A stretch of DNA of 63,989 nt, counting the filler, from Olpidium bornovanus S191 (lineage: Eukaryota; Fungi; Olpidiomycota), in the NCBI GenBank assembly GCA_017911155.1. It is 27 parts of 27 records of this genome, joined end to end, with 100 filler letters (N's around TTAATTAATTAA, not from the genome) between each part and the next. Parts side by side here need not be neighbours in the genome. Positions count along the whole stretch, not along the records: positions 30,950 to 32,356 come from JAEFCI010001998.1; 26 more parts are not named here. One strand, 5' to 3'. A program made the position numbers and the translations under genes. Each line of letters opens with the position of its first letter. The stretch's first letter is position 1. Positions 30,850 to 32,842 of this stretch are shown piece by piece. The notes under the pieces are model-generated. The model had not been told where the DNA came from. It worked only from the letters and a program-made list of their open reading frames with translations, and did not search any database.

Positions 30850-31045
30850 NNNNNNNNNNNNNNNNNNNNNNNNNNNNNNNNNNNNNNNNNNNNTTAATTA
30901 ATTAANNNNNNNNNNNNNNNNNNNNNNNNNNNNNNNNNNNNNNNNNNNNGGGCGCGGGAGGGAACCACCAGCGGCGCCGCCGCAATTTTGCCTGAAGCGA
31001 GCCCGGTACACACGCATTTTTCCCCCTTTCATTTTTTGCCCGCAG

Positions 31046-31417
31046 GCAAAACTCTTTTCTCCAAGTCGGACTCGTACAACTTCGGCAGCTTCGGCATAGC
31101 CGCCTGGACGCTGTTCCAGCTCGCCACGCTGGACAACTGGAGCGAGGTCTACAGCGGCGTCAAGCACAGCGAGGTGCTGATTTTCCCGTTCGTCTTCGTC
31201 TACATCATACTCGTGTCCTTTGTTTTCATAAAGTGAGAGTTTGTAGGAGCGAAGGGGGAGAGATGGGAGAGAAAGAGGAAAAAACGAGGAGCGGCCGCGC
31301 GCGCACCCGCCCGAAAAGAAAAAAAAAATATAAAGAAAAAGGAAGACGGACGACGGGGAAGGGGGACGGTGAGCGAACGAGGAGGAGAGGAGCCGGACAC
31401 TAACATTTTGGAATCCC

Positions 31418-31458
<41 letters not shown>

Positions 31459-31511
31459 TTTTTTCCCCCTTTTTTCGAAAAAAAAGAGCGGAGGGGGGGG
31501 CAAAAAAAGGG

Positions 31512-31547
<36 letters not shown>

Positions 31548-32240
31548 AAACAAACGTCGGTTTCTTTTTTCCCGCGCCCCCAGTCCACCCGTCTCCGACC
31601 TGGTTTTTCCGCATACGATCTCGGGGTTTTTTTTATGTTTTCGGGTTTCGCCAAAAACCTTGTGCTTGTTTTATTTTGTTTGTCTAATTCCTTACCCCTT
31701 CCTCCCCCCCCCCCCGGCATTCGCCCGCCCCAGAAAGCGAAACAGGCTGTCGAAGACGAACCCTACAGCGGCGAACGGTCCTCCCGGGGGTCCCTTTTGC
31801 CGGACGAGCCGGTCGCGCCGGAAGAGGACGGGGTCGGGGCCTGCCTGCGGGAGGAGCTGGGTATGGACAACTACTACAGCCACAACATGCCGCCAAACGC
31901 AAAGGCCGACATCGGGCGCTACCTTTCGTTGCTGGCAAGGTGAGAAAGCGGCGAGAAAAAAAAAGGCAAAAAAAGAAAAACTAGACAAAAAAACAGAAAG
32001 AAAACAAGAAAAAAACCAGAACGAGAAAAAAAAAAACGGGAAAAGAACGAGAAAAATAATGAACGAGATAAAGCGAACGAGAAAAATAAAAGAAAACGAA
32101 AAAGCAGCAAAACAAAAAGGAAAAAGAAGAGGATGGCAGACCTTGCTTACTCGTCGTTTCTTGTCTTTTTTTTTGTAAACAAAAAAAAATTCGAAGCACG
32201 GAGCACCTCATAGCGGTCTACGAGAAGCAGCAGGCCATGG
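31046..32240 (+). CDS. CatSper1-like single-domain cation channel subunit: pore loop, S6 and C-terminal exons (31046-31232, about 31734-31939, 32197 onward)
   Basis: FGSFGIAAWTLFQLATLDNWSEVY...VLIFPFVFVYIILVSFVFIN, later IGRYLSLLAS|TEHLIAVYEKQQAM. The TxDxW filter and the YII...FxFxN and YLxLxAS segments resemble CatSper1. One small exon seems lost in a homopolymer-rich stretch. Confidence 0.72.
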
Positions 32241-32842
32241 GTCACAGCGGCAGTTCTGGTCCCCACCTCCGGTTTCGACGTGGCTGCGTCAAGCGCAAAG
32301 TGCGGCAACAGAGGGGGAAGGAGGAGGGGGGGAAGTGGACCGTTGTTCGGGAAAACNNNNNNNNNNNNNNNNNNNNNNNNNNNNNNNNNNNNNNNNNNNN
32401 TTAATTAATTAANNNNNNNNNNNNNNNNNNNNNNNNNNNNNNNNNNNNNNNNNNNNCATGGGTCAGACGCAGCCGGCGACCGTGGGCCGGTCGGCAAAGC
32501 AGACGGACCGTTTCCGGACCACGAGGCTGCAAATCGGGAGCCGAACAAGGACCAGGGGTGCGCGGATGACTCGGGATCCCCTCGTGCTTCAAGGCCGAAA
32601 AATGCTGGCGGCAAGTGCACTCGGCTGAGGCCCGGCCGAACGGCTTTTCAAGGATGGATGCGCGAGGTTGACAGCGCGTCCTCGAAGCCGCAGCCGTTTA
32701 AGCGGGATATTTACAGCGACGACGAAGCGCCGAAGACGCGCGAACTTGATCCGGAACGTAAGCAATAATTGCGACCTTCGAGGGAACCACTTTCTCTGAC
32801 CGCAATAACCGCGCGCGGCCGGCCGGCGCTAACTGCCGTGAC

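What the first reader, a model, noticed from the sequence alone, without database searches (positions are those of the whole stretch)
31046..32240. CatSper1-like flagellar Ca2+ channel subunit in a fungal genome
Seen: exons encoding a single pore loop TLFQLATLDNWSEVY, an S6-like FVYIILVSFVFIN and a tail IGRYLSLLASTEH. Known: the TxDxW filter is the CatSper signature (CatSper1 TLDDW), unlike bacterial NaV TLESW, and CatSper is reported from some zoosporic fungi but not non-flagellated ones. Inference: this fungus, which also has CreA, APSES and Zn2Cys6 factors, may use CatSper-type Ca2+ signalling in zoospore swimming. Splice phases do not match across 31233-31733, so a short exon finishing S6 is probably lost in the homopolymer stretch after the CACTAAC branch point at about 31399.
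Basis: partly seen in the sequence, partly recalled or inferred. Interest (0 to 1): 0.75.

Follow-up and report, generated by a model that had tools for sequence, protein, structure and literature searches.

The report
Partial CatSper1-type flagellar calcium channel gene
This piece holds the rear half of a gene for a CatSper1-type calcium channel subunit, a kind already known from swimming fungal spores, protists and animal sperm, so it is an ordinary though divergent new member, with one puzzling gap where the end of its pore-lining helix should be.

Summary
Exons at 31046-31232, 31734-31939 and 32197-32240 encode the pore loop TLFQLATLDNWSEVY, the first half of S6, and a C-terminal tail.

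The CatSper1 reading is supported, but not by the TxDxW filter, which other single-repeat channels also carry. Three other results support it:
- By best single domain, the closest of 1.84 billion proteins are single-repeat channels that their sources name CatSper1. They come from chytrids, blastoclads, Thecamonas and invertebrates.
- The tail matches the C-terminal motif of that family, and mouse CatSper1 has the same motif.
- The phase-2 intron inside the S6 Asn codon lies at the same place in three relatives.

"Fungal" cannot be shown from this piece. Identity to any known protein is 33% or less, and only the tail leans towards chytrids.

The S6 end that every relative has (NLFVAVIVxNL) is absent. 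Two candidate exons restore the frame:
- A 19-nt micro-exon (31584-31602, PPVSDL) with good codon usage but poor splice signals.
- A 100-nt homopolymer exon (31456-31555) with good branch-point spacing but non-coding codon usage.

Neither encodes a normal gate, so assembly damage or gene decay is as likely as either. CatSper in zoosporic fungi is already published. This is a new member of a known kind, of low interest.

The parts
30950..31045 (+). 3' end of the upstream intron: branch-point-like CTGAA at 30992-30996, pyrimidine tract, acceptor CAG. S1-S5 of the channel lie outside the piece.
   Evidence: No open S5-like frame joins exon A in phase. The branch point to AG distance is 50 nt, like the other introns.
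31046..31232 (+). Exon A: end of the S5-P linker, pore helix, selectivity filter and first half of S6. It ends with AA of the conserved Asn codon (phase 2).
   Evidence: Pfam Ion_trans E = 2.2e-7. 73.6 bits on a CatSper1-like profile built without it. GC3 0.85.
31126..31140 (+). Selectivity filter T-L-D-N-W. The Asp is the residue expected to contribute to the Ca2+-selective ring.
   Evidence: T, L and W are invariant and D nearly invariant in the family alignment. Translation.
31174..31232 (+). First half of S6, VLIFPFVFVYIILVSFVFI(N).
   Evidence: Aligned with S6 of CatSper1-like proteins, with F59 and N63 invariant.
31233..31455 (+). Intron sequence: donor GTGAGA, purine-rich low complexity, CACTAAC at 31398-31404, then A35 and an AG at 31454-31455.
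   Evidence: The same phase-2 intron in the Asn codon is present in Quaeritorhiza L001, L002 and L003. CACTAAC position, spacing of 52 nt.
31456..31555 (+). Candidate exon B, version 2 (100 nt, almost all homopolymer runs): N-FFFPLFSKKKSGGGGKKREK(12)TN, donor GTCGGT.
   Evidence: For: it restores the phase, adds 24 bits on the family profile, and was equalled in 1 of 150 run-preserving shuffles. Branch-point spacing fits. Against: GC3 0.33 and about 12 consecutive AAA codons.
31584..31602 (+). Candidate exon B, version 1 (19-nt micro-exon): N-PPVSDL. VSDL aligns with the family's V-S-N-L at the end of S6.
   Evidence: For: it restores the phase, has a pyrimidine tract plus CAG acceptor, and GC3 0.83. 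Against: donor GTTTTT, no branch-point motif, only +1 bit, and four residues short with two Pro.
31603..31733 (+). Intron sequence before exon C: CTAAT at 31684-31688, pyrimidine tract, acceptor CCCCAG.
31734..31939 (+). Exon C: acidic/Pro-rich cytoplasmic linker and the start of the conserved C-terminal motif (DNYY...IGRYLSLLA from 31866). It ends in phase 2 (AG|GTGAGA).
   Evidence: The tail scores 17.8 bits on the family profile, against a maximum of 2.2 for shuffles. 23.6 bits against Quaeritorhiza CatSper1. GC3 0.81.
31940..32196 (+). Intron: donor GTGAGA, A-rich with degenerate 8-30 nt tandem repeats, CTTAC at 32146-32150, acceptor GAAG.
32197..32240 (+). Exon D (at least): S-TEHLIAVYEKQQAM, continuing the C-terminal motif. 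The 3' limit is unresolved.
   Evidence: Aligned with LA(S/A)LE......Y(E/Q)xQQ of the family. GC3 0.93.
32241..32356 (+). Unresolved: either an intron (weak donor GTCACA) or a diverged basic C-terminus. The family's closing LDDLVDL is not found in any frame.
   Evidence: GC3 0.69.

Best explanation
The piece is the 3' half of a nuclear, intron-containing gene for a CatSper1-type subunit, one of the four pore-forming subunits of the flagellar CatSper Ca2+ channel. It comes from a flagellated eukaryote whose genome is not in the protein collections searched.

Shown here: the piece encodes the pore helix, a TLDNW filter, the first half of S6, and the cytoplasmic tail motif typical of CatSper1 orthologues.

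Inferred by homology: the subunit would assemble with CatSper2-4, each giving one acidic filter residue to a Ca2+-selective ring. The channel would then admit Ca2+ into the flagellum to change its beat during zoospore or gamete steering.

The exon that should finish S6 (NLFVAVIVxNL, the gate) is not recognisable in this assembly. It is not settled whether this copy makes a working channel.
For: - In a full HMMER scan of 1.84 billion representatives, ranked by best single domain, all top hits to exon A are single-repeat proteins.
- Those that carry a source name are called 'cation channel sperm-associated protein 1'. They come from Quaeritorhiza, Coelomomyces, Oscarella, Lineus and Priapulus. 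Unnamed relatives come from Cladochytrium, Allomyces, Obelidium, Thecamonas, Chromosphaera and Nonionella.
- The chytrid member P0025 matches mouse CatSper1 in one domain of 165.7 bits. Its best single CaV repeat scores 70 bits or less, and CatSper2-4 are absent from its best 60 PDB hits.
- Exon A scores 73.6 bits on a profile of these proteins built without it, within the held-out member range of 65-99. Mouse CatSper1 scores 59.2, human CatSper3 41.3, and multi-repeat channels 13-36.
- The tail scores 17.8 bits, with a shuffle maximum of 2.2. The mouse CatSper1 C-terminal 29-mer aligns at overlapping profile positions with 12.8 bits, with a shuffle maximum of 3.9.
- The phase-2 intron in the S6 Asn codon (AA|GT...AG|T) is identical in place and phase in three relatives.
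- Published work already places CatSper genes in Allomyces and other flagellated fungi (bioRxiv 10.1101/230292; PMC13358043).
Against: - Only about 150 residues are available, and S1-S5 lie outside the piece.
- Identity to every relative is 25-33% over 148 columns. A neighbour-joining tree puts the sequence on a long branch inside the eukaryotic cluster, not within the fungi.
- Against mammalian chains alone, exon A does not separate CatSper1 from CatSper3.
- I could not fetch CatSper2-4 from protists or fungi for a proper tree.
- The S6 gate segment, invariant in relatives, is missing or replaced.
- Names given by annotation pipelines are not tested functions.
Confidence: 0.8

Rival explanations
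1. The locus is a CatSper1-derived gene that is no longer functional, or the assembly has lost or garbled the S6-end exon in the homopolymer region. In either case the sequence as given does not encode a working pore.
For: - No frame of 31233-31733 encodes anything like LFVAVIVxNL.
- In three relatives that segment is the first thing after the shared intron.
- Both frame-restoring candidates give an abnormal gate (PP insertion and a 4-residue loss, or FFFPLFS followed by polylysine), and each fails one test.
- A35 and A43 runs flank the spot.
Against: - Exons A, C and D are open, keep the family's invariant residues, and have coding-type GC3 of 0.81-0.93.
- Splice sites and branch-point spacing are intact.
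- One candidate exon was equalled in only 1 of 150 run-preserving shuffles.
Confidence: 0.4
2. It is another single-repeat voltage-gated-type channel, not CatSper1: a CatSper3/4 paralogue, or a eukaryotic relative of bacterial NaV/CaV-like channels that also carry TLDxW.
For: - Against mammalian chains, CatSper3 (28.5 bits) equals CatSper1 (28.1), and a pore-only 'Ion transporter' (7pgf, TLDDW) scores 30.2.
- Unnamed single-repeat proteins from ENA metagenomes, P0087 and P0068, score 58 and 49 bits on the CatSper1-like profile.
Against: - No protein named CatSper2-4 is among the 89 hits of the exhaustive scan, while many named CatSper1 are.
- The tail motif and the intron position are shared with the CatSper1 group.
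- In the trimmed alignment, P0068 and P0087 are gapped across the DNYY part of the tail.
- Spliceosomal introns exclude a bacterial gene.
Confidence: 0.1
3. It is one repeat of a two- or four-repeat channel (TPC, Cch1/CaV, NaV, or the two-repeat EF-hand channels that topped the whole-sequence ranking).
For: The highest whole-sequence scores and in the PDB searches belong to multi-repeat channels (T-type CaV, P0001, P0002).
Against: - Those scores are sums over several repeats. Their best single domain gives only 22-32 bits, against 37-53 for the single-repeat group, and 13-36 on the family profile.
- Many of them match only query residues 2-35.
- S6 here is followed by the CatSper1-type tail, not by another repeat.
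Confidence: 0.03

Closest known systems
CatSper1 orthologues of zoosporic fungi: Quaeritorhiza haematococci KAJ3087752.1 (P0025), Obelidium mucronatum (P0097), Coelomomyces lativittatus KAJ1512115.1 (P0095), Allomyces macrogynus KNE67881.1 (P0073)
   Same: Single pore loop with a TLDxW filter, the S6 pattern up to the Asn, the intron inside that Asn codon (Quaeritorhiza), and the tail DNYY...L..LASLE...YEKQQ. The YEKQQ wording is shared only with the two chytrids.
   Different: Identity is only 26-33%. The S6 end LFVAVIVxNL is missing. The intron before the pore loop sits 7-8 residues further downstream than in relatives, and there is an extra intron in the tail (LLA|S). Introns are longer and rich in homopolymers.
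Mammalian CatSper1 (mouse, PDB 7eeb chain A; PDB 9ubw chain A)
   Same: The TLDDW/TLDNW filter and the S6 pattern. The mouse 7eeb chain also shares the C-terminal motif ...L.LVAAVE......Q...IDELVD at overlapping profile positions.
   Different: About 26% identity over 92 columns. The His-rich N-terminus cannot be examined because it lies outside the piece. The S6 end is absent.
Bacterial-type single-repeat channels (NavAb and NaChBac family; PDB 7pgf 'Ion transporter')
   Same: Same Ion_trans pore fold at similar pairwise scores (22-30 bits). Some carry TLDDW.
   Different: These chains score only 22-30 bits against exon A, and the tail alone matches nothing in the PDB. From general knowledge of bacterial genes, they lack spliceosomal introns. 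They score lower on the CatSper1-like profile (37 bits for 7pgf).

Membership tests
CatSper1 orthogroup | Ion_trans pore module with an acidic [T/S]x[D/E]xW filter | tested here: met
   TLDNW at 31126-31140. Pfam Ion_trans E = 2.2e-7. The feature is necessary but not specific.
CatSper1 orthogroup | Closer to CatSper1 than to CatSper2-4, CaV, NaV or TPC | tested here: met
   Best per-domain hits are named CatSper1. The window scores 73.6 bits on the profile, against 41 for CatSper3 and 13-36 for multi-repeat channels. P0025 matches mouse CatSper1 at 165.7 bits. Caveat: there is no fungal or protist CatSper2-4 in the comparison.
CatSper1 orthogroup | Conserved C-terminal cytoplasmic motif (xYY...L..LA.LE......QQ..LDDLVD) | tested here: met
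   17.8 bits against a shuffle maximum of 2.2. Mouse CatSper1 aligns at overlapping positions. The closing LDDLVD lies beyond exon D or outside the piece.
CatSper1 orthogroup | Shared gene structure: phase-2 intron in the S6 Asn codon | tested here: met
   The window has TTC ATA AA|GTGAGA. Quaeritorhiza L001, L002 and L003 have AA|GT...AG|T followed by LFVAV.
CatSper1 orthogroup | Complete S6 with the gate segment NLF(V/I)AV(I/L)V | tested here: not met
   Absent from all frames of 31233-31733. Only PPVSDL or FFFPLFS+polyK can be spliced in. This may be an assembly fault.
CatSper1 orthogroup | Single six-helix repeat with a charged S4 voltage sensor | not testable with these tools
   S1-S5 lie upstream of the piece. 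The tail directly after S6 argues against a following repeat.
CatSper channel complex | CatSper2-4 and auxiliary subunits in the same genome, with flagellar expression | not testable with these tools
   Only this 1.4-kb piece is available.
Bacterial NaV (NaChBac/NavAb) | Intron-less prokaryotic gene with best match to bacterial channels | tested here: not met
   At least three spliceosomal introns with GTGAGA donors. Lower profile scores.
Four-domain CaV/NaV/Cch1 or two-domain TPC | Pore repeat followed by further repeats, and best per-repeat similarity to those families | tested here: not met
   Per-domain scores of 22-32 bits against 37-53 for the single-repeat group. The CatSper1-type tail follows S6.

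The most novel reading that the evidence does not exclude
The sequence is correct as assembled and the gene is expressed. It would then be a CatSper1 from an unsampled flagellate lineage whose S6 gate half has been naturally remodelled. The remodelling would be either a 19-nt micro-exon (N-PP-VSDL, four residues shorter) or an exon made of homopolymer runs that encodes FFFPLFS followed by a tract of about 16 Lys. Either would be an unusual activation gate for a voltage-gated-type channel.
Probability: 0.15. Interest if true: 0.45.

Novelty: new member of a known kind. Interest (0 to 1): 0.2.

Why it matters
CatSper genes in zoosporic fungi, apusomonads and other flagellates are already documented, so this adds a divergent sequence rather than a new idea. 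It is useful in three ways:
- as a marker that the source organism has, or recently had, flagellated cells;
- as a further data point on patchy CatSper retention among flagellated lineages;
- as a flag for a spot in the assembly or gene model (31400-31610) that needs transcript or read evidence.

Only if the odd S6 end proves real would it bear on how these channels gate.

Tried and rejected
- Word-indexed protein search with the joined exons found nothing.
- One search failed on a frame error of mine.
- A profile search meant to bring in named CatSper2-4 returned only 14 proteins and none of them, so no CatSper1-4 tree was possible.
- A metagenome scan for close relatives found none by tblastn.
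- The tail alone against the PDB found nothing.
- Adding the tail to the PDB query did not separate CatSper1 from CatSper3.
- I looked for the S6 end in all six frames with a family profile and found none.
- Direct A-to-C joins through alternative donors or acceptors all delete conserved residues.
- Both candidate exons cannot be used together, because the phases clash and the intron between them would be 28 nt.
- Other frames and the minus strand contain only low-complexity ORFs with no Pfam domain.
- An upstream S5 exon within 30950-31045 fits no frame or phase.
- A neighbour-joining tree on 148 columns was too weak to place the organism.

Full report
**What is in the piece.** The piece runs from 30950 to 32356 and is 49.6% G+C. 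G+C-rich blocks alternate with purine-rich, A-rich low-complexity stretches.

Three blocks are clear exons on the + strand.
- Exon A, 31046-31232, encodes (G)KTLFSKSDSYNFGSFGIAAWTLFQLATLDNWSEVYSGVKHSEVLIFPFVFVYIILVSFVFI. It ends with AA|GTGAGA, so the next codon is split in phase 2.
- Exon C, 31734-31939, encodes KAKQAVEDE...GMDNYYSHNMPPNAKADIGRYLSLLA and ends AG|GTGAGA.
- Exon D starts at 32197 (GAAG|C) and reads S-TEHLIAVYEKQQAM up to 32240.

Exon A matches Pfam Ion_trans (E = 2.2e-7, profile positions 166-223 of 241), which covers the pore loop and S6. No other frame or strand encodes a recognisable domain.

**Which channel family.** The filter motif alone does not decide the family. In the PDB search, exon A scores almost the same against several chains: a pore-only 'Ion transporter' with TLDDW (7pgf, 30.2 bits), CatSper3 (28.5) and CatSper1 (28.1). 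T-type CaV chains rank first only because several repeats add up.

The exhaustive HMMER scan of 1.84 billion representatives gave 89 hits, with a best E-value of 3e-9. Re-ranked by best single domain, the top 30 or so are all single-repeat proteins at 36-53 bits. The long multi-repeat proteins fall to 22-32 bits.

The single-repeat hits that carry source names are 'cation channel sperm-associated protein 1'. They come from Quaeritorhiza haematococci, Coelomomyces lativittatus, Oscarella, Lineus and Priapulus, plus JGI metagenome proteins. Unnamed relatives come from Cladochytrium, Allomyces macrogynus, Obelidium, Thecamonas trahens, Chromosphaera and Nonionella. None is named CatSper2, 3 or 4.

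The Quaeritorhiza protein (P0025) aligns to mouse CatSper1 in one domain of 165.7 bits. Its best CaV repeat gives 70 bits, and CatSper2-4 are not among its 60 best PDB hits.

I built a profile from 13 of these proteins without the window. Exon A scores 73.6 bits on it, inside the range of held-out members (65-99). Mouse CatSper1 scores 59.2 and human CatSper3 scores 41.3. The PDB 7pgf chain and the unnamed ENA proteins P0068 and P0087 score 37-58. Multi-repeat channels score 13-36.

**Two independent features agree.** The first is the tail. Exons C and D align to the family's C-terminal motif (xYY...L..LA(S/A)LE......Y.xQQ).
- The tail scores 17.8 bits on the profile, while shuffles average -3.1 with a maximum of 2.2.
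- It scores 23.6 bits against the Quaeritorhiza tail.
- The C-terminal 29-mer of mouse CatSper1 aligns at overlapping profile positions with 12.8 bits, with a shuffle maximum of 3.9.

The second is gene structure. The intron that splits the S6 Asn codon after its second base is found at exactly that place in three relatives. These are the Quaeritorhiza gene (TTC TTG AA|GTGAGT...AAAG|T TTG TTC GTC) and two environmental relatives, L002 and L003.

Together these place the gene in the CatSper1 group with good confidence, even though only about 150 residues are available.

**The gap in S6.** In all relatives the exon after that intron begins T + LFVAV(I/T)VNNLQ..., which is the inner, gate-lining half of S6 followed by a basic linker. 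In the window, no frame of 31233-31733 encodes such a segment. Exon A (phase 2) cannot join exon C (phase 0) directly without deleting conserved residues.

An exhaustive search over AG...GT segments found two solutions.

1. A 19-nt micro-exon at 31584-31602 (CCCCAG|T CCA CCC GTC TCC GAC CTG|GTTTTT) gives N-PPVSDL.
   - In its favour, VSDL aligns with the family's VSNL, the acceptor has a good pyrimidine tract, and GC3 is 0.83, like the sure exons.
   - Against it, the donor is poor, there is no branch-point motif, S6 would be four residues short with two prolines, and the profile gains only 1 bit.
2. A 100-nt exon at 31456-31555 begins at the first AG after CACTAAC.
   - In its favour, that AG is 52 nt from the branch-point A, against 46, 47 and 50 nt in the other three introns. 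The donor is GTCGGT. It encodes N-FFFPLFSKKKSGGGGKKREK(12)TN, hydrophobic then basic like the family. It adds 24 bits, a gain equalled in 1 of 150 shuffles that keep the homopolymer runs.
   - Against it, the stretch is made of T9, C5, T6, A8, G8, A7 and A37 runs. Its GC3 is 0.33, against 0.81-0.93 in the sure exons. About twelve consecutive AAA codons would be very unusual coding sequence.

My rough weights are 30% for the micro-exon, 20% for the homopolymer exon, and 50% for neither. In the last case the exon has been lost or garbled in assembly at the long A runs, or the copy is decaying.

**The 3' end.** The family motif should close with LDDLVDL. No frame of 32241-32356 has it. Either an intron starts at the weak GTCACA at 32241 and the last exon lies beyond the piece, or the end has diverged.

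**Source organism.** Nothing in the collections is close. The best identity is 33% over 148 aligned columns, and a metagenome scan found no close relative. A neighbour-joining tree places the window on a long branch inside the eukaryotic CatSper1-like cluster, but not inside the fungal sequences. Only the tail wording (DNYY, YEKQQ) is shared specifically with the chytrids Quaeritorhiza and Obelidium. 'Fungal' is therefore plausible but not shown.

**Likely function.** By homology (inference), the protein would be one of four different pore subunits of CatSper. Its filter Asp would contribute to the Ca2+-selective ring. The channel would let Ca2+ into the flagellum to alter the beat during steering of zoospores or gametes.

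CatSper genes in Allomyces, and their patchy presence across flagellated fungi, are already in the literature (bioRxiv 10.1101/230292, which cites Cai and Clapham 2012; PMC13358043; PMC5362262 methods). According to the same preprint, citing Syeda et al. 2016, the Allomyces pheromone sirenin activates human CatSper.

**Verdict.** The CatSper1 assignment is supported, though on better grounds than the filter. The fungal and zoospore context is untested. The gene is a new, divergent member of a known kind with an unresolved defect at the S6 gate. Interest is low unless transcripts show that the odd S6 end is real.

Noticed in passing
window 30992-31045, 31398-31455, 31684-31733, 32146-32196: Branch-point-like motifs (CTGAA, CACTAAC, CTAAT, CTTAC) each lie 46-52 nt before an AG. 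This regular spacing could help gene modelling in this genome.
   Followed up: partly
window 31420-31454 and 31512-31554: Two very long A runs (35, and 43 with interruptions) flank blocks of T9, C5, T6, A8, G8 and A7. This is a likely trouble spot for assembly and for any sequencing chemistry.
   Followed up: partly
window 31954-32128: The intron between exons C and D is almost pure purine (AT skew up to 0.97), with degenerate tandem units of 8-30 nt such as AGAACGAGAAAAATAA.
   Followed up: no
window 31369-32178: A 269-aa open frame (+ strand) runs through introns and exon C out of frame. It is a low-complexity artefact of stop-poor A/G-rich sequence, with no significant Pfam match, and could mislead ORF-based gene callers.
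   Followed up: yes
proteins P0002, P0006, P0010, P0008 (hits): The top whole-sequence hits are unnamed proteins of 800-1300 aa from Logan and ENA assemblies. They have two pore repeats, a Cys-rich insert (Y/FGCD...) between the pore helix and S6, and EF-hand-like C-termini. Their organism is unknown.
   Followed up: no
   Followed up: partly
L003 938-1207: The JGI metagenome ORF P0007, an obvious CatSper1-like pore exon, is named 'phosphatidylglycerophosphatase A' by its source, which looks like a mis-annotation.
   Followed up: no
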